The notes under the pieces: generated by a model | Told to the model about the DNA's origin: nothing | Database searches by the model: none | What the model saw: only the letters and a program-made list of their open reading frames with translations | IMG/VR virus record: IMGVR_UViG_3300037087_000760 | Span: 1-64,000 of that record | Reading direction: 5' to 3' (one strand) | Length of the DNA: 64,000 nt | Part shown: piece after piece, positions 13,374 to 57,972 of the stretch | Layout: each line of letters starts with the position of its first letter | Numbering within the stretch: the first letter of the stretch is position 1 | Translations under genes and position numbers: made by a program

Positions 13374-13434
13374 TATATATTATACTTTAAAAGTCGTATT
13401 TTTCTATTTTTAGTAATTTTTTTCGAAAAAGTTT
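13374..13434 (-). promoter_or_regulatory. Promoters of the RNA operon: AAACTTTT-N14-TAAAAA (13407-13434) and late AATATATA (13374-13381)
   Basis: Both recurrent motifs present upstream of the leader. Confidence 0.55.
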
Positions 13435-13443
13435 AATTTTTCT

Positions 13444-13647
13444 TTAAATAGTTTTCTTCTTTTTAGCCGGTTTGAAATCTTCTTTCATTAATTCATCTAT
13501 GGCTTCTTGTTTCTTCATGGGTTCACTTACAAGATATTTGCCAGCTATAATACCATACTTTCCTGTGGGTTTACCACTATTAAGTAACGGTACTACTTTA
13601 AACCCTAAATGTTGAAACTCAACACGACCAATTTTACCTCTTGCCAT
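13444..13647 (-). CDS. Small basic hypothetical protein
   Basis: Likely start MARGKIGRVEF. Confidence 0.65.
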   Translation of the reverse strand: MARGKIGRVEFQHLGFKVVPLLNSGKPTGKYGIIAGKYLVSEPMKKQEAIDELMKEDFKPAKKKKTI

Positions 13648-13740
13648 TTTACTCCTTTTTTTAAAAAGTTTTTGAGAGTGGGGATACATTCATACCCCCA
13701 TCCTCAAATCCGACCTTTTCACTTTAACACAATCTGAAAA

Positions 13741-13778
13741 CTTTGACAAAGATATGTCAAATATTTGGAAGAAAAAAA
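13741..13778 (-). promoter_or_regulatory. Bacteroidota-type promoter straddled by inverted repeat TTTGACA-N6-TGTCAAA
   Basis: TATCTTTG at 13747-13754 inside the palindrome. Confidence 0.6.
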
Positions 13779-14123
13779 TTATTTCAATATTTTCTTTAAT
13801 TTTCTTTTTCTATATATGTTAATCAATTCTTCTTCTGAACACCAACCAACCTTTTCAAATAATCTATAATACCTATTACCATTGATGATTGTATTTAGAA
13901 GTGTTCCCGGCTTTGTTAAAATTCCAATTATGAGTTTATCTGGATTTTTGATATGTTCAACCATTATTGCATCGTAAGCTCTTCTCAGAATGACATTTTG
14001 TTCTGCCATAACATCCACAATAGCTTTTTTCTTACCGACAGGTGGTATTATTGTAATTTCTTCAGTTGTTTCAAATTTAATGAACTTAGCTGTAAATATC
14101 TCTATTTTAAGATTCTCATTCAT
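13779..14123 (-). CDS. Hypothetical protein
   Basis: Operon-like overlap. Confidence 0.6.
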   Translation of the reverse strand: MNENLKIEIFTAKFIKFETTEEITIIPPVGKKKAIVDVMAEQNVILRRAYDAIMVEHIKNPDKLIIGILTKPGTLLNTIINGNRYYRLFEKVGWCSEEELINIYRKRKLKKILK

Positions 14124-14481
14124 CTTCTTCGAAAACTACTTTTTTAAATATGATTTTTTTATCTAACTCGATTTTATTTTCTTTTATTAAAATTTTTATT
14201 TTCGTATGTACAAAACAATTCAAATGTGAAATTAAAACTGGATCAATTCCTTTTTCTTTTAAAGAAGTCAATGTGGATGTTTGTTCTGTTTTTATTAAAT
14301 GTAATATATATTCTTTAATATAAGAGGGTTGTCCCTTATTCAAATATGAACACATTTCATTAAATCTTCCAATGAACTTTGAAAAATATTTTTTTTGATT
14401 CTTTGGAAGAAGATTAATTCTTTCTGCTATTATGTTTATAATAGGAAATTTATTTGGATCTCCGAAAGTGTCTACATTCAT
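14116..14481 (-). CDS. Hypothetical protein
   Basis: Operon-like overlap. Confidence 0.6.
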   Translation of the reverse strand: MNVDTFGDPNKFPIINIIAERINLLPKNQKKYFSKFIGRFNEMCSYLNKGQPSYIKEYILHLIKTEQTSTLTSLKEKGIDPVLISHLNCFVHTKIKILIKENKIELDKKIIFKKVVFEEDE

Positions 14482-15236
14482 TTGAAATATTCTTTAGCTG
14501 TTGGATAAATGGGAAGTGTTCCAAGATCGTTACGAATGTAATCAATTGGTGGTTGACTTTCCAGAATATCAAGACAAACAAAATCGTCAATCAATTCATC
14601 TTTTGTTGGAAAATTTTTGTATGTTTTCGACAAAGTAAATCTTTGGGCACCTTCTTCAAGTTCAAGTTCCCAACCATTTCCTTCATTAGAAACATTATAA
14701 GGACCAACAATTCCTCTCACAATAACTCTATATTGATGGGCGTATGCTTCTTTTTTAATTAAAATTCCGATACGATTTTCTCCACCATAATCTCTTTCAC
14801 AAATACAAATTAATTGTGTAGCTAATTCTTTCTCATTAAAATATTCATTATCCCAATATTCTTCAATGATTGTGGTGGATTCTTCCATTTTATCAAATAA
14901 TAATTCTTCCGTTTTATTTTTTGGTTTTCTGTCAGTGAAGAATTTTCTTGCCGGTCTGTTCTGAATCCAGTTATTTAATTCCAGATTCTTTCGATCTAAT
15001 ATTTTTGTATGAATGTGTTCAAGATAATCGGTGATATTTTCAAAAGAGAAAATTGATTTATCGTAGATAATTCCACCTTTCATTAGGATATCTACTAACA
15101 TTCCAGATGATTCACTAACTAATAAGGATAATTGATCGTCATTTAAGTTAGAATCAAATTTTTTAGCAGATTCATTCCCAATGGTGAGTTTCTGTTTGGT
15201 ACAGAACTGTAAATATTTAAAAGCCGAATCTTTCAT
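14478..15236 (-). CDS. Hypothetical protein
   Basis: 252 aa ORF. Confidence 0.7.
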   Translation of the reverse strand: MKDSAFKYLQFCTKQKLTIGNESAKKFDSNLNDDQLSLLVSESSGMLVDILMKGGIIYDKSIFSFENITDYLEHIHTKILDRKNLELNNWIQNRPARKFFTDRKPKNKTEELLFDKMEESTTIIEEYWDNEYFNEKELATQLICICERDYGGENRIGILIKKEAYAHQYRVIVRGIVGPYNVSNEGNGWELELEEGAQRFTLSKTYKNFPTKDELIDDFVCLDILESQPPIDYIRNDLGTLPIYPTAKEYFK

Positions 15237-15468
15237 TTTCTAAAGCTATTTTAACATCAGGATATCTTCGATGATTTGTGAAATTACCATTGATTAAGTC
15301 CGCACACATCCAACCATCTTTCACTTTCCAAATGTGTTTCTTGAATTTCTTAAACATGATTGGAAAGAAAGGGTTATCGAACCTTTTATTTAATTTATCC
15401 TGATGATGATATTCTATTTCATATCCCAATGAAATAGCTAATTCTTTTGCTTCCAAATCATCTCTCAT
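15217..15468 (-). CDS. Hypothetical protein
   Basis: Operon-like packing. Confidence 0.6.
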   Translation of the reverse strand: MRDDLEAKELAISLGYEIEYHHQDKLNKRFDNPFFPIMFKKFKKHIWKVKDGWMCADLINGNFTNHRRYPDVKIALENERFGF

Positions 15469-15471
15469 GGT

Positions 15472-15780
15472 TTAATTTTTTACAATTGTATCATTAATTC
15501 GGTGCTCTGATCCAATATGATTAGCAAGTGAGGAACGATTTCCAAAAACGACAACTCGTTTTTCTGAATCGACTAATGTGACACCCCAATATCCCATGGC
15601 TTCATCTTTTCCGATTAAGATAATTGGTGGTTTTAATTCATTCATCACTTTCACTGTATAATTAGTGTAGCTTGAATATGCTCTTCCATTTTCATCCACA
15701 TAAACGGGATCGGTTCTCTCGTAATCACATCCTGTTAAAAGAATGAATCCAAAAATCATTAAAATTAAAAAATTTTTCAT
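15472..15780 (-). CDS. Putative lipoprotein
   Basis: Signal peptide with lipobox LLTGC. Confidence 0.65.
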   Translation of the reverse strand: MKNFLILMIFGFILLTGCDYERTDPVYVDENGRAYSSYTNYTVKVMNELKPPIILIGKDEAMGYWGVTLVDSEKRVVVFGNRSSLANHIGSEHRINDTIVKN

Positions 15781-16019
15781 AATGTTTTTATTAATTGTTC
15801 AGCCTCTGCAATATGAATAAACTCTGTGTGATATAAAGAAATAGGAATAGTATCCACTTTCTGAGTTCCGATTATTTGACACAAATGTATAAATTTAGGA
15901 TCAGAATAACTTTGTTCTATTATAGTAATCTCAGGAAATTTTTCACGAAGTTTTTTGATAATCGCCTCAATTTCTTCTGATGTATATACCCTCGGTTTTA
16001 TCATGATACTATTTATCAA
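15777..16019 (-). CDS. Hypothetical protein
   Basis: Operon-like overlap. Confidence 0.55.
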   Translation of the reverse strand: MINSIMIKPRVYTSEEIEAIIKKLREKFPEITIIEQSYSDPKFIHLCQIIGTQKVDTIPISLYHTEFIHIAEAEQLIKTL

Positions 16020-16743
16020 TTATTAAAATTTGTGACTCAATCATTGTTCCACTCTCTTTGAAAGTACCAGAGGGTACTTTTTGAATTTTAGCACGAACTT
16101 TTTTCAACCAATTTCTGAATTCGGTTTCCTTTTTGTTGTTTGAGGTTTCCCAATGTCTTGAAGCGATAGTAACCAATCTACCACCATCTTTCAAACAATC
16201 ATACATCTTGTAAATGTGGTCTATATCCTGATTTTTCGAGAACGGTGGATTGGCGATAATTTTATCGAAGTGTGTATCACACTCTGTTAAGAAGTCATTT
16301 CCAAGTAATCGGAAACCAACGATTTTATTCAAAAAAGTTTGGTTCACATCCATTAATTCGTATCCCCAAACAGTTCTCGCTCCCCAAGTTTCACGATGGA
16401 TAGCCTTAACAATGGCACCCTGTCCAGCACTTGGTTCTAATACTTCATCATCAATTTGAATTTCAGCCAATTCAACCAGAATATCACTTAATCCCTCTGG
16501 TGTTTCAAAAAATTGAAATTCCTTTTTAAGATTACGACTTTCTCCGTTTGCTATCTGATAAAGTAATTCGGTGGGATCAGTAGGAAAAACAAACCCAAAA
16601 ACCTTTCCACCTTTCCATTTTCCACCAATCAGTTCAAGTGCCTTTGCAACTTCCTGATAAAGCTTTCTTTCCAGTTGTCCATAGGGTAGTTTTACAACAA
16701 AACCCTCAACGGTACATCCTTTTAATACATCTTCCTTAGTCAT
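16009..16743 (-). CDS. SAM-dependent amino (N6A/N4C-type) methyltransferase
   Basis: FFETP, LEPSAGQG, IIANPPF; start moved to MTKEDVLK downstream of promoter. Confidence 0.85.
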   Translation of the reverse strand: MTKEDVLKGCTVEGFVVKLPYGQLERKLYQEVAKALELIGGKWKGGKVFGFVFPTDPTELLYQIANGESRNLKKEFQFFETPEGLSDILVELAEIQIDDEVLEPSAGQGAIVKAIHRETWGARTVWGYELMDVNQTFLNKIVGFRLLGNDFLTECDTHFDKIIANPPFSKNQDIDHIYKMYDCLKDGGRLVTIASRHWETSNNKKETEFRNWLKKVRAKIQKVPSGTFKESGTMIESQILIIDK

Positions 16744-16760
16744 TGTTTCAGTTTGAACTA

Positions 16761-16802
16761 CAAATTTACAACAATAAGCTGAAATAAAAAAATTAATATA
16801 TA
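16761..16802. promoter_or_regulatory. Back-to-back host-type promoter (TAAATTTG, minus) and late promoter (TTAATATATA, plus)
   Basis: Both motifs match their recurrent consensus. Confidence 0.65.
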
Positions 16803-16807
16803 AATTC

Positions 16808-17581
16808 ATGGTCATTCAGAGATTTAACGATATTGTTTTTGAGAAAAAGTTGGATTTTTTCTTATATTCACTTGATGAAGGGTTATCTTTTGAAGATTTT
16901 AAAGATAAGGTGAAAAGATATTTACCGAATATAAAGACAAAAGAACAAGCCAAAAATTTCTTATTGGGTGTAATTAAAAAACTGAAGCCTAAAAAAGTTT
17001 TTATATTTTTTTTAATAAAAGCCGTATTACTTCTTAACTTATTGACAATCAGTGAAACATTTGATTTATTTAAAGGGACACAATATTATAAAGTTGTTAC
17101 TGAATATAGGGAATTCGTAAAGCCAAAAAATGAAAAAATCAAAGAATTTATAGCTAAATTATTCCAAAGAGAAGCTGGTGGAATAGTAAATGCAACAAAA
17201 ACAGATTCCACAGGAACAAATACTTATATCGGGGCTTTTCAATTTAGTAAATCAGCTCTGAAAGAACTTGGGTTGGGACATATCACGATTGATAAATTTA
17301 AAAATAATCCAAATATTTTTCCTTACGAGGAACAAGAAAAAGCATTAATGAAATATATGGATCTGAATGAATATTATTTAAGAAGATATATGAGTTACAT
17401 TGGAAAAGAGATAAATGGAGTTGAAATAACAAAATCGGGTATATTGGCAGCGGCTCACTTGGTTGGTCAGGGAAAAGTAAAAAAATTTTTGAGTAGTAAC
17501 GGTAAAAAAGATCCCAGAGATGGTAACGGTGTAAGATGTTCTACTTATATGAAAGAATTCGGTGGATATGATATTGAATAA
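16808..17581 (+). CDS. Lysozyme-like / lytic transglycosylase domain protein
   Basis: QREAGG, GAFQF, QEKAL, SGILAAAHLVGQG, YMKEFGGY; CTS-like start. Confidence 0.7.
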   Translation: MVIQRFNDIVFEKKLDFFLYSLDEGLSFEDFKDKVKRYLPNIKTKEQAKNFLLGVIKKLKPKKVFIFFLIKAVLLLNLLTISETFDLFKGTQYYKVVTEYREFVKPKNEKIKEFIAKLFQREAGGIVNATKTDSTGTNTYIGAFQFSKSALKELGLGHITIDKFKNNPNIFPYEEQEKALMKYMDLNEYYLRRYMSYIGKEINGVEITKSGILAAAHLVGQGKVKKFLSSNGKKDPRDGNGVRCSTYMKEFGGYDIE

Positions 17582-18555: not shown

Positions 18556-18840
18556 TTATTTTTTATAAATAATACACAAGGGGTCATAATTAGTCATTCG
18601 AATAAGCTTCCTAAATGCCCCTCTGTAATCTTCATTATAAACTAATGGAGATTCATCCGAATCAGATGAAAAAATTTTCTTCAAAAGTTTGTAATTAATC
18701 TCGTATGGATCACCCTTGAAGATAATTCTATCTGTTTTGTTAGTTTCAATAAAATTAAGGATAGCTACATTCAAGTGTTTTTGGGATTTGAATGATTCGT
18801 AAACTATTTTCTCTCTTATGTGAATTTCCACCAAGGCCAT
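18556..18840 (-). CDS. Hypothetical protein
   Basis: AAACTTTG-N14-TAAAAC at 18854-18881 upstream. Confidence 0.6.
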   Translation of the reverse strand: MALVEIHIREKIVYESFKSQKHLNVAILNFIETNKTDRIIFKGDPYEINYKLLKKIFSSDSDESPLVYNEDYRGAFRKLIRMTNYDPLCIIYKK

Positions 18841-18898
18841 ATTTAATTTTCTTGTTTTATCTTAATTTTGTTACAAAGTTTTAATTTAGTTCACAGAT

Positions 18899-23162: not shown

Positions 23163-23492
23163 TTATTTTAAAGTAATTAAATAACAATTCGAGGCAAAAA
23201 CATTATCACAATATTCAGCCTTACATTTATATTCACCACTTGGTAAGAGCATTAATATGTCCTGTTGGTCAATCGGAAGATCCAATTGACCCATATTACC
23301 ATCAATAAAAACAGGAATATCATACCCAGCCAATTCCTCAGCATCTCCGTGAATATATGCCTTATTTGTTACAACACTATCCATTACAAAATCACCGTAA
23401 CTTTTAGGTTTAACCAAAGCTGGTTCTTGGTCTTTATCAAATATACCCAATAATGACATGGGTTTTGTGGTTGTAAATCTTAACTGTTTCAT
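23163..23492 (-). CDS. Hypothetical protein
   Basis: 109 aa. Confidence 0.6.
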   Translation of the reverse strand: MKQLRFTTTKPMSLLGIFDKDQEPALVKPKSYGDFVMDSVVTNKAYIHGDAEELAGYDIPVFIDGNMGQLDLPIDQQDILMLLPSGEYKCKAEYCDNVFASNCYLITLK

Positions 23493-23887
23493 ACAATCTT
23501 ATTTTTTAATAAATCCTTGTTTGCTTTTTTAATAGTTGGTCTTATTTTGGAATTGGTCTTTGCTTTTCCAACAGTATATAAATCAGTCGAAACTAATTTG
23601 TTATCATCATTGGATAAAACAATGAATTCATCCCCAGCATACCTTATAAATATATCCTTTTCGAACAATAAAGTTTTAATTTTTCTGACAATCAACCTTA
23701 TATGTTCGTCCCCATTAAAATGCCCACCTTCATTAACTTTCTTTAATCCATTAATGTCAATGAAGTACATAAAGGTATAATCTGTTAATTTGACTTCCCT
23801 GAATAAGAAATGACGATTATAGAGCTTGGTCATATCATCATGAAAAGCCATGTACTCTAATTCTCTTATTCTTTTTTCAGTAATCAT
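23489..23887 (-). CDS. Stand-alone, C-terminally short GGDEF-like domain (AGDEF)
   Basis: HDDMTKLYNR, IDINGLKKVN, GHFNGDE, RYAGDEF. Confidence 0.8.
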   Translation of the reverse strand: MITEKRIRELEYMAFHDDMTKLYNRHFLFREVKLTDYTFMYFIDINGLKKVNEGGHFNGDEHIRLIVRKIKTLLFEKDIFIRYAGDEFIVLSNDDNKLVSTDLYTVGKAKTNSKIRPTIKKANKDLLKNKIV

Positions 23888-30581: not shown

Positions 30582-30717
30582 ATAATTTTTTAGTTATTTA
30601 GAATTTCAACAAAGGTATGTAATATTATTGAGATAAAAAAATTTCAATAACAATCAGTATAATAATAAATTAGGTGGAAAAATTATTTAGATGGGTAAAA
30701 AAATTATTTAGAAATGA

Positions 30718-31403: not shown

Positions 31404-31462
31404 AGCTTATTTTGAATATAGACCACAAAATTACAATAAATTAGCTTGATAAAAAAATAAAA

Positions 31463-31552: not shown

Positions 31553-32815
31553 ATGAAAACAACAAAAACATATTCAATTGATGAAGATATATACAAATCT
31601 TTTGAAAAACTAACAGAGAGATTAAACAAGAATAAAAGTTCTATCATCGAAAATTCAATTATTGAATTTCTTAAAGAAAATGGAGTTTCAAATTATAGTA
31701 CATATTCTTTAATAACTAATCCTAATTATGAAGTTACGATTGAAAACCAAGATGAAACTTTTACATTTTTGAGTGATGGTAGTAAGATATTGAATTCAGT
31801 ATTCGAACAATCTTTTAAGAAAGTAGAAAAAATGAATTTATCAGATCCCCCATCTATACTCATACTTCCACCATTGGTTATTAAATTATATATCAAAGAT
31901 TATGATAAAAAAATATCGTTTATAAATACTATCAATAAATATAAAGATGGTGAAAAATATTCCTTGATTGGTAAAAAATTCAGATCTATTATAAATAATA
32001 AAATTTTCAAGGTAATGGAAGATGGAAAGAAGCATGTTTCCGTTGTTGAAATTATAGAGGGTATAGATTCCGAAAAACTCAAAGTAAATGATCCATATTT
32101 GAATATAAAGAAAGATTTGTTTTTTACTTCTTTTAAAATGATGGAAGAACAAGTTCATATGGGTGTTGGTGATTATGCCTTTGAATATTTGGGTACATCC
32201 AGAATAGACGGGGCTCCGATTTTCAAAGTAGGAGGTGGTCTTTTTCATGAATTCTTTTCCGATGATTTTGATAAATTCAAAAAATACATAAGGGAAAGAG
32301 AATATGTTACCATTTATTCTATAAACAATACAGGGAGTGATAAGGTATTTTTAATTGTTGATGAAATTGAAAAACTACCAATGTTAGAAGATTTAATACC
32401 GAGATTTGATTCAGAGAAATATAATGAAGTAGAGAAAAGTAAAGAAGAAAGAAAAATATTACAAAAGGCCATTGAAGAATCCTTGGGATCTGGTATCGAG
32501 GCAACTATGGCCAAAGATGATGCGGGAAATGATACGATGAATAATATGAAATCATCATATGAAGTCATATTGGATAATATATTATTTACTAATCAATCTG
32601 AAGATAAAACAAATAAATTTATACAGTTAATGAAAGAATGTTTATATGATATTCGTAAAGGTGATTTTATAAATGAATTTGAAACATCCAATCAAATTGT
32701 AAAATTTATTAAAAGTTTGGGAGTAATAGAAACATTAGATCCAAATAGTGAAATTTCTAAAGTTAAATATCAACTATTAAGAGAAATCATAAAAATACAT
32801 AATCAAAAATACTAA
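31553..32815 (+). CDS. Protein with N-terminal ribbon-helix-helix domain
   Basis: KTYSIDEDIYKSFEKLTERLNKNKSSIIENSIIEFL. Confidence 0.65.
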   Translation: MKTTKTYSIDEDIYKSFEKLTERLNKNKSSIIENSIIEFLKENGVSNYSTYSLITNPNYEVTIENQDETFTFLSDGSKILNSVFEQSFKKVEKMNLSDPPSILILPPLVIKLYIKDYDKKISFINTINKYKDGEKYSLIGKKFRSIINNKIFKVMEDGKKHVSVVEIIEGIDSEKLKVNDPYLNIKKDLFFTSFKMMEEQVHMGVGDYAFEYLGTSRIDGAPIFKVGGGLFHEFFSDDFDKFKKYIREREYVTIYSINNTGSDKVFLIVDEIEKLPMLEDLIPRFDSEKYNEVEKSKEERKILQKAIEESLGSGIEATMAKDDAGNDTMNNMKSSYEVILDNILFTNQSEDKTNKFIQLMKECLYDIRKGDFINEFETSNQIVKFIKSLGVIETLDPNSEISKVKYQLLREIIKIHNQKY

Positions 32816-43178: not shown

Positions 43179-43206
43179 AAACTTCTTTTGAATTAAAGAA
43201 TATAAT
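43179..43206 (+). promoter_or_regulatory. AAACTTCT-N14-TATAAT promoter
   Basis: Member of recurrent 14-nt-spaced class. Confidence 0.6.
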
Positions 43207-43211
43207 AATCA

Positions 43212-43392
43212 CAAGGAGCCTGAATCTCTCTTGTCGTTTGTGGTGTCTCAACGAATGATGACACGGCTTCGATGGCTCGGCATAAAACCATTCGGTTTTC
43301 TCTTTCACTGATGTGCGAAGGTTACAAATATGTTTGAAAGAGTTTCACGATAGAAATGACCCCGATTTTTTCAGGTAAAATCGGGGTTTTTT
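43212..43392 (+). ncRNA. Unknown ~180-nt structured RNA
   Basis: GAGCC/GGCTC, GTGTC/GACAC, AAAACC/GGTTTT, CTCTTTCA/TGAAAGAG stems; own promoter and terminator; no ORF. Confidence 0.6.
43359..43392 (+). terminator. Intrinsic terminator
   Basis: ACCCCGATTTT/AAAATCGGGGT plus T-run. Confidence 0.85.
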
Positions 43393-43423
43393 ATTTTCAT
43401 AAATCGGCTAAAATAAATTCCTT

Positions 43424-43451
43424 AAACTTTCAATTTTTTTCTGAATAAAAT
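43424..43451 (+). promoter_or_regulatory. AAACTTTT-N14-TAAAAT promoter
   Basis: Recurrent class. Confidence 0.6.
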
Positions 43452-43457
43452 AAATAT

Positions 43458-43881
43458 CAGATAATTCAAAGGGAGTTGCTACCCAATGGATATTTGGTCG
43501 TGTACCCCAGACGTAACTGAAGTCGTTTGTAGCAGATCGTTAATTGTTACCCATTGAAAGGTGGAAAATCCTACTACACCTGAAAACATAGTGGGTAGTC
43601 TGTTTCACTCAACGAAGCCGCCCTAGCCTTTGAGGCGTAATCAAAGGACAATTTTTTCTTTTTATTGTCTAAAAAGATCGGTATATGTCCTCTTCCGTGA
43701 ATTAGGATTGTGTTGACTCTGAACACATAAAAGATTGAGCGGATTTTAGAACATCTATCCTTCAGGATGTCCGGCAGTTCATACGACAATGAAACTTTTT
43801 TATTCCTCTTTATCAAAACAAGTAGGAAGTTTTTAGCTAAAAATTACCCCCCGTCATATTTCAGGTATGTCGGGGGTTTTT
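43458..43881 (+). ncRNA. Unknown ~420-nt highly structured RNA
   Basis: Many hairpins and long-range complements, GC higher than flanks, own promoter and terminator, no credible ORF. Confidence 0.6.
43846..43881 (+). terminator. Intrinsic terminator
   Basis: CCCCC-rich stem with GGGGG partner plus T-run. Confidence 0.8.
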
Positions 43882-43887
43882 AATTTT

Positions 43888-43915
43888 AAACTTTTTATTT
43901 TTCCTACCTTATATT
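43888..43915 (+). promoter_or_regulatory. AAACTTTT-N14-TATATT promoter
   Basis: Recurrent class. Confidence 0.6.
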
Positions 43916-43939: not shown

Positions 43940-44479
43940 ATGAGTACAATTGATCAATTCAGAGAAGTAATACAGAACTGCCAGCGTGTTTTTGTAGGGA
44001 AGATGGAAGATTATGGTCTTTCATGGAGAATACTCAGACCATCATCATTAACAGACCAAATTTTTATTAAAGCCAGTCGAATAAGAAGTTTGGAAGAAAA
44101 GAAAACATCAAAGATAAATGAGGGAGTAGAGCCAGAATATATTGGAATGATAAACTATTCGGTAATGGCTATAACTCAAATGAAATTTCCTTATAATGAA
44201 AATCCTAATTTATCAAAAGAAAATGTATTAGACATCTACATAACCGAGACAAATGAAGCTTTAGAATTGATGTTGAATAAAAATCATGATTATGATGAAG
44301 CTTGGAGAAAAATGAGAATTAGTAGTTTAACTGATATAATATTACAAAAACTTTTAAGAATAAAACAAATAGAAGATAACGATGGAACAACAAAAGTGTC
44401 AGAAGGATTAGAAGCCAATTATTATGACATCATTAATTATTCCATTTTTGCCCTGATAAAATTATCAGAGATTAAATAA
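43940..44479 (+). CDS. DUF1599 (nucleotide-modification-associated domain 1) tandem protein
   Basis: KMEDYGLSWR...RIRSLE...INYS and KNHDYDEAWR...RIKQIE...INYS. Confidence 0.8.
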   Translation: MSTIDQFREVIQNCQRVFVGKMEDYGLSWRILRPSSLTDQIFIKASRIRSLEEKKTSKINEGVEPEYIGMINYSVMAITQMKFPYNENPNLSKENVLDIYITETNEALELMLNKNHDYDEAWRKMRISSLTDIILQKLLRIKQIEDNDGTTKVSEGLEANYYDIINYSIFALIKLSEIK

Positions 44480-45832: not shown

Positions 45833-46900
45833 TTAATCTAACCTTGTTCCACACATAGGACACCATCCATAATTTTTATTTCTAACTCTATATCCACATC
45901 TCTTATTAGGACAGTATTCTCTTCCTTGTGTTTTCACATAAGATGTATTATTAAAATTAGCGTTCGGAATTATATATGGATTATCCTGAAGTTTGAATGG
46001 ACCCGATTGATAAGGTGCTGATTGAAATGGAACATTATCATTTTTCTTTTCTGAGAATGGTAACAATTTAAAACAATAAGTTTTAATAATTGAACCACAA
46101 GTAAATTCAGTTTCCGAAAAATGTTGATTGGATTTCTTACCTTTTTCAATACGACCAGTTTCACTTAAACTCTCTGATAATAAACCATTGAATTTTAGAT
46201 TACCTCTTACATTCAAATCTCCATTGATATCAACATTACCTTTTAAATTAATATTGTTATTTAGATTTGTTGTGTATTTTCCATTAACATTGGTGGAATC
46301 TGAACTCAAACCGGCCGAACCGATATTCGGACTATTCGGACTATTTACTGACCCCCAATTTTTACCTTGATCACATACATTAATTTGTTGATCATATAAT
46401 GGATCACCACAGTAATATATTGGCCATGAAGGTGGAGTATATGGTGTTGTCCCCGGCCATGGTGTCGGCCATGGTGAAACTGGTGGAACATATGGTGGAT
46501 TGTTAATAATAATCGGACCATTTGTCCATGTATTCATACCATTCAATTTAGATTCATTCCAAAAAATGACTTCTAATTTCCCATTACCTTTAATGGCTTG
46601 TTTTGTTAATGGATTATTCTTGTCTACAAGATATGTATTGAATTTTAATTTCCTATTCGTACCGATGAATCGTTCAACAATAACGGATTGACCGGGATTA
46701 AGGACTAATATTGAATTGTCCGTTTCCGACCCATTCATTTTTAATTGAAAACCAACTCTCTCTGATAAAGGATTGTAGACTTTTAGCTGAAATTCATCTC
46801 CGTCATTAAGATAAATTTTGTTTTTGTTTTTTCCGTATAATTTGCGTTTTTGACCATTGACGAGAATTTCGCAAGACGGTGTTAAATAATTGTAATTCAT
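45833..46900 (-). CDS. Hypothetical protein with Ig-like N-terminus, Pro-rich linker and C-terminal Zn-ribbon
   Basis: FQLKVYNP...; CPNKRC...CPMCG; AAACTTTT-N14-TATAAA at 47028-47055. Confidence 0.65.
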   Translation of the reverse strand: MNYNYLTPSCEILVNGQKRKLYGKNKNKIYLNDGDEFQLKVYNPLSERVGFQLKMNGSETDNSILVLNPGQSVIVERFIGTNRKLKFNTYLVDKNNPLTKQAIKGNGKLEVIFWNESKLNGMNTWTNGPIIINNPPYVPPVSPWPTPWPGTTPYTPPSWPIYYCGDPLYDQQINVCDQGKNWGSVNSPNSPNIGSAGLSSDSTNVNGKYTTNLNNNINLKGNVDINGDLNVRGNLKFNGLLSESLSETGRIEKGKKSNQHFSETEFTCGSIIKTYCFKLLPFSEKKNDNVPFQSAPYQSGPFKLQDNPYIIPNANFNNTSYVKTQGREYCPNKRCGYRVRNKNYGWCPMCGTRLD

Positions 46901-47061
46901 AATTACCTCTCTTTCTTTTATTTTTATTTGTGAAAAACCAATTTCTTTGACGCTTTTGAAGGCAGTCTCTAAAGCAACTATAATGTTACTCGAAATCTGT
47001 TAATTCCAAAAAAGATTAATACATTCTTTTATATGTCTAAGAACTCAAAAAGTTTTACTTT

Positions 47062-50927: not shown

Positions 50928-52187
50928 TTATTTCTTTTTGTCATTTTGTCCTATTCTAAATCCCATAGAATTCTTAGAATCTCTTACTCCATGACTCATT
51001 ATTTCACTATTCTTCTTCATAGAATATACTTCAGCTAAAGACAGTTCTGTTTTTATGACAGCTGGATCTAAACCAATTTTTTCTGCTATCAACTTACAAT
51101 CAGCTTTACTTAGTTTATGAAATTCTTTTCGGGCTATTAATCTCTCAGGTCTTAATAAAGCATCATCCAATTCATTTAAATCAGTGTTGAATGTCGCTAT
51201 AATCTGAATTGAAAGAATATCATTTAAAATACCATCAGTTAGATTAAGTAAATTGGTTATACCTAAGTTTCTGGTCGAATTACGAGAGGCAAGGAGAGGT
51301 TCAGCATCTTCAATGAGTAATATAGTCCTTTTGCCATTTTCGAGGGTCCAATCGGTTATAAAGTTGAAAAAAGAGGGTTCTGTGATGGACTCTATCATAG
51401 TCGGTGGGAAATACAGAACCTTTTTGTTAATTTTTGTTAATCTCTGGAGCAAATATCGAATGTAATATGTTTTTCCAGTGCCGGGATGACCATGTAATAA
51501 AACCAATCCCTTATCATCTTTTGTTAATCTTCTTATTAATTTTTTATTAAATTCTTCAAAATTAGCACCATAGTAAAGATCAAGATCTGGAATTTTCACT
51601 TTCTTATCAATAGTAAACTCTCTGACATATAAATTTCCATTATCAACACTTATAAGTCCAATGGAATTTTTAGATATCTCATTAACAACAGATTTCTTGA
51701 AAATTTCGAATACTATTTTTTCTAAATTCATATTATGATTCTTTGAATCAGGTGGTGGACTTACCAAGTAATTTGAACTTATTAACTCTGTGTCTTTATC
51801 CAATTTTACATCTAACTCTGGGTTTGTATAAAAAACCGATGATGAATTTGCGTAAATGTTAATCAAGTAACCTGTATCAATCATCCAAACTTCTCTACTG
51901 GTTTGAGAAATATTATTTTTTACATCAAAATATGAATCTCTGTAAATGAGTTTACATTTTTTAAATTCTTTGAATATTTCTTTTTTAATTAAATCTAATC
52001 TGAAAAATTGACCATCATCATGCACTATCTGTATTGTATGAGGTTGTTCTTTAAAACGATTATAGTATTCTTCCAAAACATTGAAATCATCAAGAGATTT
52101 ACTTTTCCCATTGAATTTAAGTGTGGTTAGAATTGAATTAGAGTTATCCCCGTAATATTTGTTGTTGTCTTTAGTTTCTTTTAACAT
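50928..52187 (-). CDS. AAA+ ATPase
   Basis: GHPGTGKT, LLIEDAE, NLTDG, ATFN, DALLRPERL. Confidence 0.9.
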   Translation of the reverse strand: MLKETKDNNKYYGDNSNSILTTLKFNGKSKSLDDFNVLEEYYNRFKEQPHTIQIVHDDGQFFRLDLIKKEIFKEFKKCKLIYRDSYFDVKNNISQTSREVWMIDTGYLINIYANSSSVFYTNPELDVKLDKDTELISSNYLVSPPPDSKNHNMNLEKIVFEIFKKSVVNEISKNSIGLISVDNGNLYVREFTIDKKVKIPDLDLYYGANFEEFNKKLIRRLTKDDKGLVLLHGHPGTGKTYYIRYLLQRLTKINKKVLYFPPTMIESITEPSFFNFITDWTLENGKRTILLIEDAEPLLASRNSTRNLGITNLLNLTDGILNDILSIQIIATFNTDLNELDDALLRPERLIARKEFHKLSKADCKLIAEKIGLDPAVIKTELSLAEVYSMKKNSEIMSHGVRDSKNSMGFRIGQNDKKK

Positions 52188-53748: not shown

Positions 53749-54186
53749 ATGAAAAAGTATTTATTAATTTTTTTGATGTTATTCCCAATCTTAGGAATAT
53801 CACAAACCAAAGAACAAGTTAAAGATTTAATCAAGAATAATAATCTGATTGGAATGTCTAAAGATTCTCTGGTTACTAAATTCCCAGATGGTTTCAATTC
53901 AGATACTTTAAATGGAATTAAGTATGATGTAGTCAAGGGTAGAATAAATAAGATCTTGGTGACTTGCTTCTTAACCCAAAATAAAAAGAATGAACAGCAA
54001 ACTTGTTTTCATTGTAGATTCTTTATCGTTATTACTGTATTACAATCCAGTGATATAAGTAACATATTGAATACCAATTTTAAAAGAATTAAAAATCAAT
54101 GGGAACAATATCGAGAAAAAGATACCTTAAATTGGTCAAGTAAAGAAACATTGTATACAGTTACATTAGAATCTGTAAAAAAATAA
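53749..54186 (+). CDS. Secreted hypothetical protein
   Basis: Signal peptide MKKYLLIFLMLFPILGISQ. Confidence 0.65.
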   Translation: MKKYLLIFLMLFPILGISQTKEQVKDLIKNNNLIGMSKDSLVTKFPDGFNSDTLNGIKYDVVKGRINKILVTCFLTQNKKNEQQTCFHCRFFIVITVLQSSDISNILNTNFKRIKNQWEQYREKDTLNWSSKETLYTVTLESVKK

Positions 54187-54212
54187 ACTTTTGATAAAAG
54201 ACATTGTATAAT
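54185..54212 (+). promoter_or_regulatory. AAACTTTT-N14-TATAAT promoter
   Basis: Recurrent class. Confidence 0.65.
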
Positions 54213-54218
54213 AAATAC

Positions 54219-54415
54219 AGGTCCCTGACTATACCTGTCGTTTTCTGTAAGTGTACGACAACAATTACCGTCTTAGAGTTTTCACGACACTAAACTCCGT
54301 CTTAGAGTTTTCACGACACTAAACTCCGTTTTTACTCTCATATAGTAGAGCTTTTTCCGTAAAAAATCAAACCCCAATGAAAGGTCAGGGAGAATTTCAT
54401 TGGGGTTTAACTTTT
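54219..54415 (+). ncRNA. Unknown ~190-nt RNA with tandem repeats and terminator-loop pairing
   Basis: Own promoter; 5' TCCCTGAC complementary to terminator loop GTCAGGGA; terminator AAACCCCAATGAAA/TTTCATTGGGGTTT. Confidence 0.6.
54268..54329 (+). repeat. Exact 29-bp tandem repeat, 2 copies plus 4 nt
   Basis: CCGTCTTAGAGTTTTCACGACACTAAACT x2 + CCGT. Confidence 0.95.
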
Positions 54416-54427
54416 ATAGAAAATTTT

Positions 54428-55159
54428 TTATTCCTTATGTGGAATCCTCCATGAAAATCCACAGTTAATGAAAACTGTTGACATACCACTACCATAAGAC
54501 AAATCAAATTGAAAGTCATCAGTAATAAAATAGTTAAAACCTAAATCACCATATATAAAAGGGGATGTTTTAGATGAAAAGAAACTATATGATTCAATGA
54601 ATGATCCAAATTTCGAAGTAATACTATAACCCAAATTAATACAGTAAAAACCCTGAGAGTATGGATTAATACCATCATAAAGTATTCCCACATTACCAAG
54701 AACAGTAAATTTACCAAATCCTTTCTGAAGAATAAGTGAACCCTGTGGTGAATGATCGGGAATAGAGAATTCTGGTTTACCAATATTAGGTAAATTTAAC
54801 ATTCCAAGAATAGCAATATCAGGGAGGTACTTTATATCTTGAATTATGGGAATTTTTACACCGAAATATAAAGCTTTTATACCAGCTATCTGAGAATTGG
54901 TAAGTAAATCGCCAAAGTCTGTACCGAAACGAAATTCCAGATGTTTGTACATACCAAATCTAAAAAGATTTGTATTACAAAGTTGATTGATTGGATAACA
55001 ACCAAATCCATTGTATCCCCAGCCAGATTCATAATCTGTTCTATGTAATCCGACTGAATATGCTCCGTTTGAAAATCCCGGGCGATCAGGAGAAAAAGAT
55101 TGAGAGAAAAGTAATATTGGGAAAAGCAAGATGATTATGAGGAAAGAAAATATCTTCAT
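54428..55159 (-). CDS. Outer-membrane beta-barrel (MetA-pathway/transporter-like family)
   Basis: Signal peptide, DRPGFS..AYSVG...ESG, alternating beta-strands, aromatic C-terminal strand. Confidence 0.7.
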   Translation of the reverse strand: MKIFSFLIIILLFPILLFSQSFSPDRPGFSNGAYSVGLHRTDYESGWGYNGFGCYPINQLCNTNLFRFGMYKHLEFRFGTDFGDLLTNSQIAGIKALYFGVKIPIIQDIKYLPDIAILGMLNLPNIGKPEFSIPDHSPQGSLILQKGFGKFTVLGNVGILYDGINPYSQGFYCINLGYSITSKFGSFIESYSFFSSKTSPFIYGDLGFNYFITDDFQFDLSYGSGMSTVFINCGFSWRIPHKE

Positions 55160-55165
55160 AAAGAA

Positions 55166-55495
55166 TTACTTTTTAAATGATTCCGAATGTCTCACACCAA
55201 CTGGTTCATAAAGATATTTGGTGATTAATACAACTGGCACGACCACAGTTTCAGAGAAAATGACGGATAAAACAATATTACCTGTACTCAGTTCGTAAAT
55301 AACATCAGGATTTTTTTGAGAATCTTCATTTCCCAGACCATATGGTTCAACAACGACTGTTTTACCATCGATGACAAGTTCTTTACTGGAAGCAAAACCA
55401 CCAGATGAAATTACCCAAACGGCCATGATGATAACAAGGATTAATCCAAGAAACCATACACCGCAATAACCACCTACTAAAGTTCCTGTTTTCAT
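55166..55495 (-). CDS. Membrane protein
   Basis: N-terminal TM. Confidence 0.65.
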   Translation of the reverse strand: MKTGTLVGGYCGVWFLGLILVIIMAVWVISSGGFASSKELVIDGKTVVVEPYGLGNEDSQKNPDVIYELSTGNIVLSVIFSETVVVPVVLITKYLYEPVGVRHSESFKK

Positions 55496-55643
55496 AAAAT
55501 TTTTTAGATTAATAAAAGACGAATAAAAAATATTGAAAGACCAATTACAATTAATAAAGGGAATGAGAATAAAAGATATCCCGTAAATAGTAATCCAATA
55601 CTCAAAGCAATAAAATAAGATGTCGGATTAATAATTTTCTTTA

Positions 55644-55856
55644 TCATATTGTCCTAATTAAACTTCCGTTTTTATTGATAATCTTGACTTTACCACTGAA
55701 AAGTTGAACCTGAACACTTTCATTGGTAACATCATACCAATCGGCTCTTTGAGCGTCGCCACCCGAATAAGCTGTTCTTATTTTGTTCATTGTCTGGGAG
55801 TTGTAAACTTCGACATTCCCTTTGACTATTTTTAAGATCTTATTCATAATGAGCAT
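55644..55856 (-). CDS. Hypothetical protein
   Basis: TACCTTTG promoter at 55873-55880. Confidence 0.65.
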   Translation of the reverse strand: MLIMNKILKIVKGNVEVYNSQTMNKIRTAYSGGDAQRADWYDVTNESVQVQLFSGKVKIINKNGSLIRTI

Positions 55857-55907
55857 TCTTAAATTGTATCTACAAAGGTAGGGATATTTTTCGAAATAAA
55901 AAAATTA

Positions 55908-56660
55908 TTAGTCAATGGATTCCAAAATAAATCTTTGGGAATTACCAATTAAACGCTCTTTAGCGTTATAATATTCTCTGATACAGTTCCCACAAAAAGA
56001 GCAAGTTGAATGTCTTTCACAACAGGTATAAACAAATGGATTCTTTCGGAAATTTTTCATTATCTTATCCATTTCAGTTTTCTTTATACACCAATAACTA
56101 TTGATCGTTCTTTTTTTCCAAATATAATTTTTCTTGTGTTCATCTGGTACATCAGATGAATAATAGGCCATAAAAGTCAATACGACAGCCACTCCTTTTG
56201 AAGTGTAATATTCGATAGCTGGTTTCACTACATTATCAAGATTCCATGTATTAACACGAATACGGACAAACATCAAATTGTCTGGAATAGTCTTTAATTT
56301 ATGAAATGATTTATCGGTTTTAAGACTTGGATTAATGGTCAATACAACTGGTGCCGAAAAATTACCCAGATCCTTTGGAATGCTTGTATTGTAAAATCTG
56401 TCTTTAAATTGTTGAGTACTGGATTCAACGATATCTCTATCAACATTTGAATCATTACCATCATTAACTCTCACAATTCTATCGTTTGATAAATCAATTG
56501 GTGGGATATGAGGTAATGTTTCTTCTAATGGTTCTAAATAGGATCTTCCACTTTGAAAGAAACAATCTGAACATCCTACTGGACATCTACCAGATTGTGG
56601 AATACATTCAATTATTCCTGAACCTTTTACTTTGGGATTCCATAACCAATCTTGTTTCAT
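55908..56660 (-). CDS. Atypical radical-SAM-like protein
   Basis: CPVGCSDC motif; C-terminal CC...CxxCxxC. Confidence 0.65.
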   Translation of the reverse strand: MKQDWLWNPKVKGSGIIECIPQSGRCPVGCSDCFFQSGRSYLEPLEETLPHIPPIDLSNDRIVRVNDGNDSNVDRDIVESSTQQFKDRFYNTSIPKDLGNFSAPVVLTINPSLKTDKSFHKLKTIPDNLMFVRIRVNTWNLDNVVKPAIEYYTSKGVAVVLTFMAYYSSDVPDEHKKNYIWKKRTINSYWCIKKTEMDKIMKNFRKNPFVYTCCERHSTCSFCGNCIREYYNAKERLIGNSQRFILESID

Positions 56661-57238
56661 TTGATAAAATCGTTGATTTTTTCTTCACTTCTGAGTACTA
56701 ATTTAACTTTCTCTTTCAATTTTTTAGTTTCAATATCCTGATAGTATTTTCTTTGTTTTAATAAATCTTTTAATGCCGTTTGAATATCCACTTGCCATGT
56801 TTTAGGTGATAATGTGTAAAACCCATCATATCCTGTGCTGGATGTATCTAAATTTAGATAATACGATTTATCAGCTGCTTCATCAGAAATAGATGCCGAT
56901 ATACCGAATGGTACGGTTTTATGGTGGAATCCTATTCTGTTGAATTTACCATCTTTGCCTTTGGGTGTATATTCTACATCGCAATAATCGATAAAATCTA
57001 CTGCCCATTTAGCATTAAGTACTTTTAAATACTTGTATTCCTTTCCTTTGTTTTTATCCCCATCCCAAGCAAAACGAATACCAAGTATTCTATCTTTATT
57101 TGTCAATTGGGATAATTTGATTTTATTAGAACTGTTTGCACGATCAGCCCTATCTTTTTCAATTTGTTTCAGACGATTATTAATCGTTGTTTGTAATGAA
57201 ACAAGTTCTTCCTTTGTAAGATTATCAATATTTTCCAT
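56657..57238 (-). CDS. Hypothetical protein
   Basis: 193 aa. Confidence 0.65.
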   Translation of the reverse strand: MENIDNLTKEELVSLQTTINNRLKQIEKDRADRANSSNKIKLSQLTNKDRILGIRFAWDGDKNKGKEYKYLKVLNAKWAVDFIDYCDVEYTPKGKDGKFNRIGFHHKTVPFGISASISDEAADKSYYLNLDTSSTGYDGFYTLSPKTWQVDIQTALKDLLKQRKYYQDIETKKLKEKVKLVLRSEEKINDFIK

Positions 57239-57241
57239 AAT

Positions 57242-57916
57242 TTATAACATCATTCTTTTTGTGATTTCAATAAGAACCTTAACATCAAGTTCACAATATT
57301 GCATAATTGCATCGTAATCTTTTTTTAACCAATAATATTCATGTACTTTACTACCATTTAAAATGTTCTTAGAGGATTCTATACCCAAATCATAAGCGAC
57401 TTCATCCATTGATGGATTTACCCTCTGAATCTTACCACTACTTTTCCAGACATCAAATATATCCAGATTCCATGTTTCCCATGGCTTTTTATCTACTGTG
57501 TTAATGTTCGAAGGAATTTCCAATCCATACTTATAAAACTTTTTAGTTATCCAAGGAATATCAAAATTCTTTATATTGTATCCACAAATTCTTTTTTTAC
57601 TACCAACACTATCAAATAATTTCTTGATATTGTTCATCAAGGCTTCTTCATCCCCATCTCTATTTAAAAAAGAACCGATTTGAGAAACACCATTTTTGAA
57701 TATACCATACGATACACATACAATCATCCCATGTTCAGCCATCAATGGAGCTTTCATTGGGTAAAGTTGTTCATATGGTTCTTTCCATTCATCTTTGAAA
57801 ACCTCACATTTTCTCAGGAATAAATCATAACCACGATGATCTTTTCTTTTTAAAGTTTCTAAATCTGGATACTTTGAGGTCGTTTCTATGTCAAAATAAA
57901 AAAAGTCGGTGTACAT
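57242..57916 (-). CDS. 3'-5' exonuclease (PolB proofreading-like, DEDD)
   Basis: FDIET, GYNIKNFD, YCELD; AAACTTTT-N14-TATAAC at 57937-57964. Confidence 0.85.
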   Translation of the reverse strand: MYTDFFYFDIETTSKYPDLETLKRKDHRGYDLFLRKCEVFKDEWKEPYEQLYPMKAPLMAEHGMIVCVSYGIFKNGVSQIGSFLNRDGDEEALMNNIKKLFDSVGSKKRICGYNIKNFDIPWITKKFYKYGLEIPSNINTVDKKPWETWNLDIFDVWKSSGKIQRVNPSMDEVAYDLGIESSKNILNGSKVHEYYWLKKDYDAIMQYCELDVKVLIEITKRMML

Positions 57917-57972
57917 AATAAAATATAATTTTTCTTGTTATATACACCGACATCAGAAAAGTTTGTGAATAT

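What the first reader, a model, noticed from the sequence alone, without database searches (positions are those of the whole stretch)
13407..57964. Third promoter class: AAACTTTT-N14-TAWAW, eight sites with identical spacing
Seen: sites at 13407-13434(-), 18854-18881(-), 43179-43206(+), 43424-43451(+), 43888-43915(+), 47028-47055(-), 54185-54212(+) and 57937-57964(-), all with exactly 14 nt between boxes. They precede all three ncRNA units and the tRNA operon. Known: T4 middle promoters combine a MotA box with a -10. Inferred: a phage sigma- or activator-dependent middle class.
Basis: partly seen in the sequence, partly recalled or inferred. Interest (0 to 1): 0.6.

Follow-up and report, generated by a model that had tools for sequence, protein, structure and literature searches.

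The report
Conserved phage-specific promoter class, probably middle
A two-box motif (AAACTTTT, 14 bases, TATAA) is a real promoter class shared by a clade of huge phages that infect Bacteroidota; it differs from the host's own promoters and drives tRNA arrays, small RNAs and, in relatives, the gene for the phage's late sigma factor.

Summary
The motif is real. All eight sites exist with exactly 14 nt between the boxes. Only five carry the exact 8-mer; three have one mismatch, and a ninth site lies at 23650-23676(-). With the core AAACTT-N16-TAWAW the window holds 9 sites against 1.6 expected, and the 211-kb record holds 24 at this spacer against about 7 at other spacers. Seventeen of the 24 lie in the 11% of the record that is intergenic.

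An unbiased scan ranks AAACTT at N16 as the top partner of TATAA. The sites precede four of five tRNA arrays, terminator-ended ncRNAs and nucleotide-metabolism genes.

The phage is a relative of the Bacteroidota-infecting 'Mahaphage' huge phages. It also carries host-type promoters (TTTTTTTAT-N14/15-TAnnTTTG) and a T4-late-like class (AATATATA).

The spacing preference recurs in six relatives. Orthologous genes keep the boxes while the spacers diverge. In four relatives the motif sits in front of a gp55-like minimal sigma gene, so the class should act before the late phase.

No MotA or AsiA homologue was found. An ECF-like sigma occurs in several relatives but not in this 71%-complete record or in relative G002. 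The recognition factor and the timing remain inferred, and no RNA data exist.

The parts
13408..13434 (-). Class-3 site, exact AAACTTTT-N14-TAAAA. It is the upstream member (P1) of a tandem promoter pair ahead of the tRNA array at 12848-9399.
   Evidence: The same P1 + P2 arrangement stands before arrays at 155.6 kb and 170.5 kb; the array at 73.8 kb has a class-3 site about 137 nt upstream of its P2.
13374..13381 (-). AATATATA box (class L) of the second promoter (P2) of the tRNA-array leader. It is preceded by GACT at a fixed 10-nt distance.
   Evidence: GACT-N10-AATATATA is present in all five array leaders.
18855..18881 (-). Class-3 site (AAACTTTG-N14-TAAAA), 14 nt upstream of the 94-aa ORF at 18556-18840.
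   Evidence: Orthologues in four relatives keep AACTTT-N15-TA.A with unrelated spacers.
23650..23676 (-). It lies inside ORF 23489-23887 and is a possible internal promoter for 23163-23492.
43179..43205 (+). Class-3 site (AAACTTCT-N14-TATAA) driving ncRNA unit 1.
43211..43395 (+). ncRNA unit 1, about 185 nt. A conserved 5' stem-loop starts 5-6 nt after the -10 box. The unit ends in an intrinsic terminator at 43358-43388 followed by a T run.
   Evidence: No Rfam family matches.
43424..43450 (+). Class-3 site (AAACTTTC-N14-TAAAA) driving ncRNA unit 2.
43456..43885 (+). ncRNA unit 2, about 430 nt. It ends in a G+C-rich hairpin at about 43847-43877 followed by a T run.
   Evidence: No Rfam match.
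43888..43914 (+). Class-3 site, exact, 25 nt upstream of the DUF1599 (nucleotide-modification-associated) gene at 43940-44479.
   Evidence: The orthologous site in relative L009/L010 is AAACTTTT-N14-TATAC.
47029..47055 (-). Class-3 site, exact, 128 nt upstream of the 355-aa gene at 45833-46900.
   Evidence: The box and most of the spacer are conserved in relative L009, where the -10 box reads TATCA.
54185..54211 (+). Class-3 site, exact (-10 TATAAT), driving ncRNA unit 3.
54217..54412 (+). ncRNA unit 3, about 195 nt. Its 5' stem-loop and TGTCGTTT resemble those of unit 1. It holds a tandem 29-nt repeat and a terminal hairpin at about 54371-54410.
57938..57964 (-). Class-3 site, exact, 21 nt upstream of the 3'-5' exonuclease gene at 57242-57916.

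Best explanation
The sites are working bipartite promoters of a class special to this phage clade. The upstream box AAACTT(TT) lies at about -34 to -27. The -10-like box TATAA(T/A) follows 16 bp after the hexamer, which is 14 bp after the 8-mer. There is often an A-rich tract further upstream.

The promoters are read by the host's multisubunit RNA polymerase carrying a specificity factor other than the host primary sigma. The most likely factor is the ECF-like sigma-70-family protein conserved in the clade.

The class acts before the late phase. It transcribes tRNA arrays, terminator-ended small RNAs and nucleotide-metabolism genes, and in relatives it transcribes the gene of the gp55-like minimal sigma. 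That sigma would then switch on the AATATATA late class. The inferred order is: host-type TAnnTTTG promoters, then phage sigma, then this class, then gp55-like sigma, then late genes.

Shown: the motif, its spacing, its placement and its conservation. Inferred: which factor reads it, and when. My separate odds are about 0.9 that it is a real promoter class, about 0.65 that it acts before the late phase, and about 0.4 that the ECF-like sigma reads it.
For: 1. Statistics.

2. Placement. Of 25 sites found by a position-weight scan, most are intergenic and point toward a downstream unit. These units include tRNA arrays at 13.4, 73.8, 155.6 and 170.5 kb, tRNA-Gln at 158.4 kb, and ncRNAs that end in intrinsic terminators, one of them beside a Ro60/TROVE gene. 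Where a site precedes a coding gene, the distance from the -10 box to the ATG is mostly 14-38 nt.

3. Conservation of the spacing preference in relatives, each counted among 25 spacers (the N14 and N13 spacers together for LR756502): G001 5 of 33, G002 11 of 59, G003 5 of 33, G004 4 of 14, LR756501 9 of 39, LR756502 13 of 30.

4. Phylogenetic footprints. Five orthologous upstream regions of the 94-aa gene keep AACTTT-N15-TA.A while the spacers are unrelated. Two window sites are kept in the closest relative. All nine LR756501 sites lie just upstream of ORF starts.

5. Not host-type. The same genome has 25 sites of TTTTTTAT-N14/15-TAnnTTTG, the Bacteroidota sigma-A -7 element. A transcription-start map of a flavobacterium lists no motif like this one (PMC9723704).

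6. Before late. A 124-aa family matches T4 gp55 best: Foldseek hit 7d7c_F with TM 0.71 and rmsd 1.8 A, hhalign E = 1.8e-4, PDB profile search E = 0.018. Its gene follows a terminator plus AAACTTTT-N14-TATA(A/T) in G002, LR756501, L062 and L063.

7. Sigma candidate. Relatives G001 and G003 have TIGR02937 hits of 73.8 and 66.7 bits and a phrog_1740 hit at 1e-23. Homologues occur in LR756501-4, LR745206 and Lak phages. In G003 the sigma gene sits behind a host-type promoter. 'AAC' in the -35 box is the ECF hallmark (established knowledge).
Against: No transcription start sites or expression timing are available, because no RNA runs hold this phage.

The ECF-like sigma was not found in this record, which is only 71% complete, nor in G002, which CheckV rates complete and which shows the strongest motif enrichment.

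ECF -10 elements usually contain CGT or GTC, whereas this -10 box is TATAA-like.

The co-occurrence of sigma and motif cannot be separated from phylogeny. The genomes with neither (PTm1, pT24, MA9V-2) are simply more distant relatives.

The motif upstream of the sigma genes themselves is only a relaxed version, AAACAA-N16 or an N13 spacing, and it is not seen in every genome.
Confidence: 0.45

Rival explanations
1. The promoters depend on an activator. A phage DNA-binding protein, functionally like T4 MotA but unrelated in sequence, binds AAACTTTT at about -30 and recruits polymerase that holds the host sigma-A or another sigma.
For: The box spans about -34 to -27 and is centred near -30, as a MotA box is. 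It is 8-9 bp long and sharply conserved. G002 has the motif but no ECF-like sigma.
Against: No MotA or AsiA homologue was found in this record or in five relatives. The downstream box is TATAA, not the host's TAnnTTTG, so host sigma-A would lack its -7 element. No candidate binding protein was identified.
Confidence: 0.2
2. A host-encoded alternative sigma, for instance one of the many Bacteroidota ECF sigmas, reads these promoters and the phage exploits it.
For: The AAC-type -35 box with a 16-bp spacer fits ECF geometry. G002 lacks a phage ECF-like sigma.
Against: ECF sigmas are normally held inactive by anti-sigma factors. The only ECF-type motif seen in a flavobacterial start-site map has a CGT -10 box. 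The motif is kept across phages that probably infect different hosts.
Confidence: 0.12
3. This is not a separate class. The same gp55-like sigma that reads AATATATA also reads these weaker TATAA boxes, helped by the upstream box, which would make the sites late promoters.
For: The -10 regions resemble each other (TATAAT/TATAAA against TATATA), and both classes are followed by A-rich leaders at similar distances from the ATG.
Against: The motif drives the gp55-like gene itself in four relatives, so that sigma could never get started. The class-3 sites lack the AATA extension of the late box and instead have a fixed upstream box. The genes driven are not structural.
Confidence: 0.08
4. The motif is a chance product of an AT-rich genome or of repeated DNA.
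For: The genome is 30.6% G+C, and TAWAW is a loose pattern.
Against: See the shuffle tests, the spacer profile, the intergenic bias, and the footprints with diverged spacers. The sites are not copies of a repeat, because their spacers and flanks differ.
Confidence: 0.03

Closest known systems
T4 middle promoters (MotA box plus sigma-70 -10, with MotA and AsiA)
   Same: A phage-specific upstream box centred near -30, at a fixed distance from a -10 element. It is used before the late phase for tRNAs, small RNAs and nucleic-acid metabolism genes, and it sits upstream of the late-sigma gene.
   Different: The box sequence is AAACTTTT, not (a/t)(a/t)(a/t)TGCTT(t/c)A. No MotA or AsiA was found in the clade. 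The -10 box is not the host sigma-A element (TAnnTTTG in Bacteroidota), so sigma appropriation of the host primary sigma is unlikely.
ECF (group 4) sigma promoters, for example E. coli sigma-E GGAACTT-N16-TCAAA (from memory)
   Same: An AAC(TT) core in the -35 box and a 16-bp spacer. An ECF-like sigma is encoded by several phages of the clade.
   Different: The -10 box is TATAA(T/A), without the usual CGT, GTC or TC core. The sigma was not found in this record or in G002.
Phage sigma cascades such as Bacillus phage SPO1 (host sigma, then gp28, then gp33/34) and T4 late transcription by gp55
   Same: Three promoter classes with distinct consensus sequences in one genome. A gp55-like minimal sigma is present in the clade, and there is an 8-mer late-type box without a -35 element (AATATATA against T4 TATAAATA).
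   Different: Different consensus sequences, a different host phylum, and no experimental timing.
Bacteroidota sigma-A promoters (-33 TTTG / -7 TAnnTTTG)
   Same: They occur in the same genome, as class H, and probably serve the earliest genes.
   Different: Class-3 sites have neither element.

Membership tests
T4 MotA-dependent middle promoters | MotA box (a/t)(a/t)(a/t)TGCTT(t/c)A centred at -30 | tested here: not met
   The box is AAACTTTT(t), with no TGCTT in any of the 25 sites. Only the position near -30 is similar.
T4 MotA-dependent middle promoters | The phage encodes MotA and AsiA | tested here: not met
   phrog_1345 is absent from G000. phrog_1345 and PF09010 are absent from G001, G002, G003, LR756501 and LR756502. 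The AsiA control search rang nowhere, so that result is the weaker of the two.
T4 MotA-dependent middle promoters | The -10 element is that of the host primary sigma | tested here: not met
   The host-type element in this genome is TAnnTTTG (PMC9723704). Class-3 sites have TATAA(T/A) and no TTTG.
ECF sigma promoters | AAC core in the -35 box with a 16-17 bp spacer | tested here: met
   AAAC is invariant in the sites (though they were selected on it). The sharp peak at N16 between the hexamers comes from an unbiased scan.
ECF sigma promoters | A -10 box with a CGT, GTC or TC core | tested here: not met
   The -10 consensus is T25 A22 T20 A25 A20 out of 25 sites, with no G or C.
ECF sigma promoters | A cognate ECF sigma encoded by the same genome | tested here: inconclusive
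   Present in G001 and G003 and in LR756501-4, LR745206 and Lak phages. Absent from the 71%-complete G000 and from G002.
ECF sigma promoters | The sigma gene is preceded by its own promoter type (autoregulation) | tested here: inconclusive
   AAACAA-N16-TA(C/T)A(A/T) lies about 20 nt upstream of the sigma ATG in G001 and G003. LR756502 and LR745206 have (A/C)AACTTTT-N13-TATAA. Nothing was seen in LR756501 or LR756504.
Canonical sigma-70 promoters (TTGACA-N17-TATAAT) | A TTGACA-like -35 hexamer | tested here: not met
   TTGACA-N16-18-TAnnnT is barely enriched: 1 in the oriented intergenic DNA against 0.5 expected. The consensus scan does not flag the class-3 sites.
T4-type late promoters (gp55) | A single extended -10 box with no upstream element, dependent on gp55 | tested here: not met
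   Class 3 has a fixed upstream box, and it precedes the gp55-like gene itself in four relatives.
Promoter in general | A transcription start 5-9 nt downstream of the -10 box | not testable with these tools
   No RNA runs hold this sequence. The only indirect support is that the conserved 5' stem-loops of ncRNA units 1 and 3 begin 5-6 nt after the box.

The most novel reading that the evidence does not exclude
Mahaphage-clade huge phages of Bacteroidota run a three-step sigma cascade. Host sigma-A promoters (TAnnTTTG) express a phage ECF-like sigma. That sigma reads AAACTTTT-N14-TATAA promoters, whose -10 box is TATAAT-like and foreign to the host. These promoters fire the phage's own tRNA arrays, its small RNAs and the gene for a 124-aa gp55-like minimal sigma. 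That minimal sigma then reads AATATATA late promoters.
Probability: 0.33. Interest if true: 0.68.

Novelty: new variant of a known kind. Interest (0 to 1): 0.55.

Why it matters
Nothing has been published on how the largest known phages, the Mahaphage clade and its relatives, time their transcription. The Al-Shayeb 2020 text mentions promoters only once, in another context.

This finding gives a concrete and testable promoter grammar for that clade, with three classes that have sharp spacing. It links the phages' large tRNA arrays and unknown small RNAs to one dedicated class, and it places the putative late-sigma gene under that class.

It also shows a TATAAT-type promoter operating in a host phylum whose primary sigma does not use such elements. 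That points to a phage-supplied specificity factor and offers orthogonal promoter and sigma parts for Bacteroidota genetics.

The kind of thing, phage-specific promoter classes in a cascade, is well known. The members and the consensus sequence are new.

Tried and rejected
- **Near-identity search.** Megablast of 20 kb against the phage collection found nothing.
- **Known RNA families.** Rfam found only tRNAs, and no family for the ncRNA units.
- **Polymerases and regulators in G000.** No sigma-70 domains, TIGR02937, RNAP beta, T7-type RNAP, gp55 families or MotA were found. The record is only 71% complete, so this absence is weak evidence.
- **Related-locus searches.** One with the 355-aa protein found nothing. 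One with the 391-aa protein found a single relative.
- **Host clue.** The TonB-receptor search in bacterial genomes gave only 25% matches, to Ignavibacteria and Bacteroidota, which is too weak to name a host.
- **Sequencing runs.** Only peat DNA runs hold the stretch and there are no RNA runs. Read laying was therefore not used, since DNA contigs cannot show starts.
- **False lead in G002.** A strong AAACT-N22-TATAAT signal proved to be a 66-bp tandem repeat, not a promoter.
- **Synteny around the sigma gene.** It gave no answer on whether G000 once had the sigma; the shared neighbour is a ClpP gene.
- **Literature.** Searches for the 8-mer and for promoters of jumbo or crAss-like phages found nothing that describes this motif.
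- **Canonical promoters.** A TTGACA-type -35 box and a Bacteroidota-type reading of the class-3 sites were both considered and rejected.


Full report
**What the window is.**
The window is the first 64 kb of a 210,983-bp IMG/VR virus record with 30.6% G+C, which CheckV rates 71% complete. The record encodes EF-G, ribosomal protein bL12, a Ro60/TROVE protein, a MetRS-like enzyme, NAD synthase and a TonB-dependent receptor. It has 67 tRNA genes in five arrays.

A conserved 1331-aa protein is 55% identical to one in LR756501, the 735-kb genome. It is more distantly related to proteins of the 460-642-kb genomes and of Tenacibaculum, Chryseobacterium and Prevotella Lak phages. Al-Shayeb et al. 2020 place those largest genomes in the 'Mahaphage' clade and predict Bacteroidetes hosts (PMC7162821).

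Only 8% of ORFs have a Shine-Dalgarno-like 4-mer, and the leaders are A-rich, as in Bacteroidota. The DNA occurs in peat metagenomes, and no RNA run holds it.

**Checking the observation.**
All eight sites exist with exactly 14 nt between the boxes. Five have the exact 8-mer and three have one mismatch. The conserved core is AAACTT-N16-TAWAW. With that core the window has nine sites, the extra one at 23650-23676(-), against 1.59 expected; 0 of 100 shuffles reach nine.

Across the whole record the count peaks sharply at this spacer: 24 against a mean of 6.8 at the other spacers (P = 2e-7). Seventeen of the 24 lie in the 10.8% of the record that is intergenic (P = 6e-12).

I scanned every 5- and 6-mer at every spacer upstream of TATAA and TATAAT. 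AAACTT at N16 ranked first, and TTGACA did not appear. A position-weight scan gives 25 sites with the consensus: A-rich tract, AAACTTTTt, 13 nt, TATAA(T/A).

**What the sites precede.**
- tRNA arrays: the sites lie ahead of the arrays at 13.4, 73.8, 155.6 and 170.5 kb, and directly before tRNA-Gln at 158.4 kb.
- ncRNAs: three units in the window each end in a hairpin followed by a T run.
- A non-coding stretch just upstream of the Ro60/TROVE gene.
- Coding genes: a DUF1599 nucleotide-modification protein, a 3'-5' exonuclease, a VWA protein, a transposase-like protein and several unknowns.

The conserved 5' stem-loops of ncRNA units 1 and 3 begin 5-6 nt after the -10 box. This is where a transcript would be expected to start.

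**Two other promoter classes in the same genome.**
The commonest intergenic 8-mer is AATATATA, which I call class L. It has 96 sites, 49 of them intergenic, usually 5-6 or 16-24 nt before an ATG and with no fixed -35 partner. This resembles the single-box T4 late promoter TATAAATA (established knowledge).

A second class, class H, is TTTTTTAT-N14/15-TAnnTTTG. It has 25 sites at those two spacers and almost none at any other. TAnnTTTG is the -7 element of the Bacteroidota primary sigma (PMC9723704).

It carries neither the host element nor the late box. The flavobacterial start-site map lists only TAnnTTTG variants, a sigma-54 motif, TAnnTTGY and an ECF motif with a CGT -10 box.

**Conservation in relatives.**
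An alignment of the 1331-aa protein found eleven related loci in IMG/VR. Among all spacers from 6 to 30, the N16 spacer of AAACTT...TATAA takes:
- 5 of 33 in G001
- 11 of 59 in G002
- 5 of 33 in G003
- 4 of 14 in G004
- 1 of 11 in G005

About 4% would be expected by chance.

For the 8-mer, the results are:
- LR756501: 9 of 39 at N14
- LR756502: 5 at N14 and 8 at N13, of 30
- Lak-B5: 5 of 28
- PTm1, pT24 and MA9V-2: no preference

.

All nine LR756501 sites lie just upstream of an ORF, eight of them 5-35 nt from the ATG.

The footprints are the strongest evidence:
- The 94-aa gene at 18556-18840 has orthologues in G001, L018, G003 and G004. All five upstream regions keep AACTTT-N15-TA.A, while the spacers and flanks are unrelated.
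- In the closest relative (72% protein identity), the sites equivalent to 47055 and 43888 are kept, even though ncRNA units 1 and 2 are missing there.

**Timing.**
A 124-aa protein family is very conserved: 73 members at 50-90% identity, with no Pfam match. Its best match everywhere is T4 gp55:
- PHROG phrog_234, weakly
- hhalign of a 30-sequence profile, E = 1.8e-4 over columns 3-85
- PDB profile search, top hit 7d7c_F at E = 0.018
- an AlphaFold model with pLDDT 81.9, whose top Foldseek hit is 7d7c_F with TM 0.71 and rmsd 1.8 A; region 2 of other sigmas follows

In G002, LR756501, L062 and L063 the gene of this protein lies behind a terminator hairpin, then AAACTTTT-N14-TATA(A/T), then a 127-168-nt leader. 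The spacers have diverged. A fifth homologue has the box at N12.

A late sigma must be made before late transcription starts. The class therefore cannot depend on that sigma, and it should act earlier. This step is inference, and this record does not contain the gene.

**Which factor reads it.**
MotA and AsiA homologues were not found here or in five relatives. Iyer et al. 2021 state that jumbo phages of this group, including Lak and PTm1, lack their own polymerase but encode sigma factors and gp33 (PMC7824862).

G001 and G003 encode an ECF-like sigma (TIGR02937 at 73.8 and 66.7 bits, phrog_1740 at 1e-23). Homologues occur in the five largest genomes and, more weakly, in Lak phages. In G003 the gene lies about 130 nt downstream of a class-H promoter, and relaxed versions of the motif lie just upstream of the gene in G001 and G003.

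The AAC core and the 16-bp spacer fit ECF promoters. The TATAA -10 box does not.

The sigma is absent from this incomplete record and from G002, which has the motif. I therefore rank the ECF-like sigma as the most likely reader but not as established. An unrelated activator or a host alternative sigma remain open.

**Verdict.**
The reading 'phage-specific, before late' is supported by comparative evidence. The MotA analogy is functional at most. This is a new variant of a known kind of system. It is of moderate interest because it gives the first testable transcription grammar for the clade that holds the largest known phages.

Noticed in passing
window 55873-55903(-), 59824-59854(-), 63479-63510(-), 30610-30640(-), 31426-31456(-); 25 exact sites record-wide: A sharply spaced host-type promoter class, TTTTTTAT-N14/15-TAnnTTTG (the Bacteroidota sigma-A -7 element with a T-rich upstream box). 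It often lies back to back with an AATATATA box on the other strand.
   Followed up: partly
window 2135, 4471, 4500, 19469, 19508, 41169, 43162, 48705, 48733 and others; 96 sites record-wide: AATATATA boxes 5-6 nt or 16-24 nt upstream of ATG codons. The 5-6 nt group suggests leaderless mRNAs. The box resembles a T4-type late promoter.
   Followed up: partly
window 13150-13195(-); G000 73455-73467(-), 88908-88920(+), 155954-155966(+), 156414-156426(+): Each tRNA-array leader has a terminator-like hairpin with a U run, directly followed by GTTCTTTAAAATA. This resembles the boxA antitermination element of rRNA operons (from memory: B. subtilis TGTTCTTTGAAAA). It may be a nut-like site that lets polymerase read through the arrays.
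   Followed up: partly
G000 9.4-12.8, 68.6-73.3, 89.0-92.7, 154.4-158.5 and 169.2-170.0 kb: There are 67 tRNA genes in five arrays. Several Rfam tRNA hits span about 128 nt (L002 4936-5064, 5296-5423, 5549-5678; L005 11311-11439), which suggests inserts or introns of about 55 nt.
   Followed up: no
G000 98555-98950 and 99198-100817: A class-3 promoter drives a non-coding stretch of about 370 nt with two similar modules (GAAGCGGT...AGAGTTACTTC), directly upstream of a Ro60/TROVE gene. These are candidate Y-RNA-like partners. The AGTTACTTC motif recurs in the tRNA-array leaders.
   Followed up: no
window 43211-43240 and 54217-54245; 54258-54330: ncRNA units 1 and 3 share a 5' stem-loop with a CCUGA loop followed by UGUCGUUU, so they look like one RNA family. 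Unit 3 also holds a tandem 29-nt repeat.
   Followed up: partly
window 7222-9252(-); G000 156046-156420(+): The phage encodes EF-G (all five domains) and ribosomal protein bL12. The bL12 gene is embedded in a tRNA-array leader behind a class-3 promoter.
   Followed up: no
G002 (L028-L040), for example 107-640, 51848-52050, 146651-149700: Many 66-bp tandem repeats give a spurious AAACT-N22-TATAAT signal. G002 also has a single tRNA with anticodon CUA, a possible TAG suppressor.
   Followed up: partly
window 31553-32815(+): A 420-aa protein behind an AATATATA box has weak hits to a ribbon-helix-helix domain and to the poxvirus late transcription factor VLTF3 family (E = 0.002 and 0.007). It is a possible transcription regulator.
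   Followed up: no
G000 as a whole: IMG/VR labels the record 'provirus'. Its content and its relatives look like a fragment of a lytic huge phage. No capsid, terminase, sigma or gp55-like gene was seen among the parts examined.
   Followed up: no
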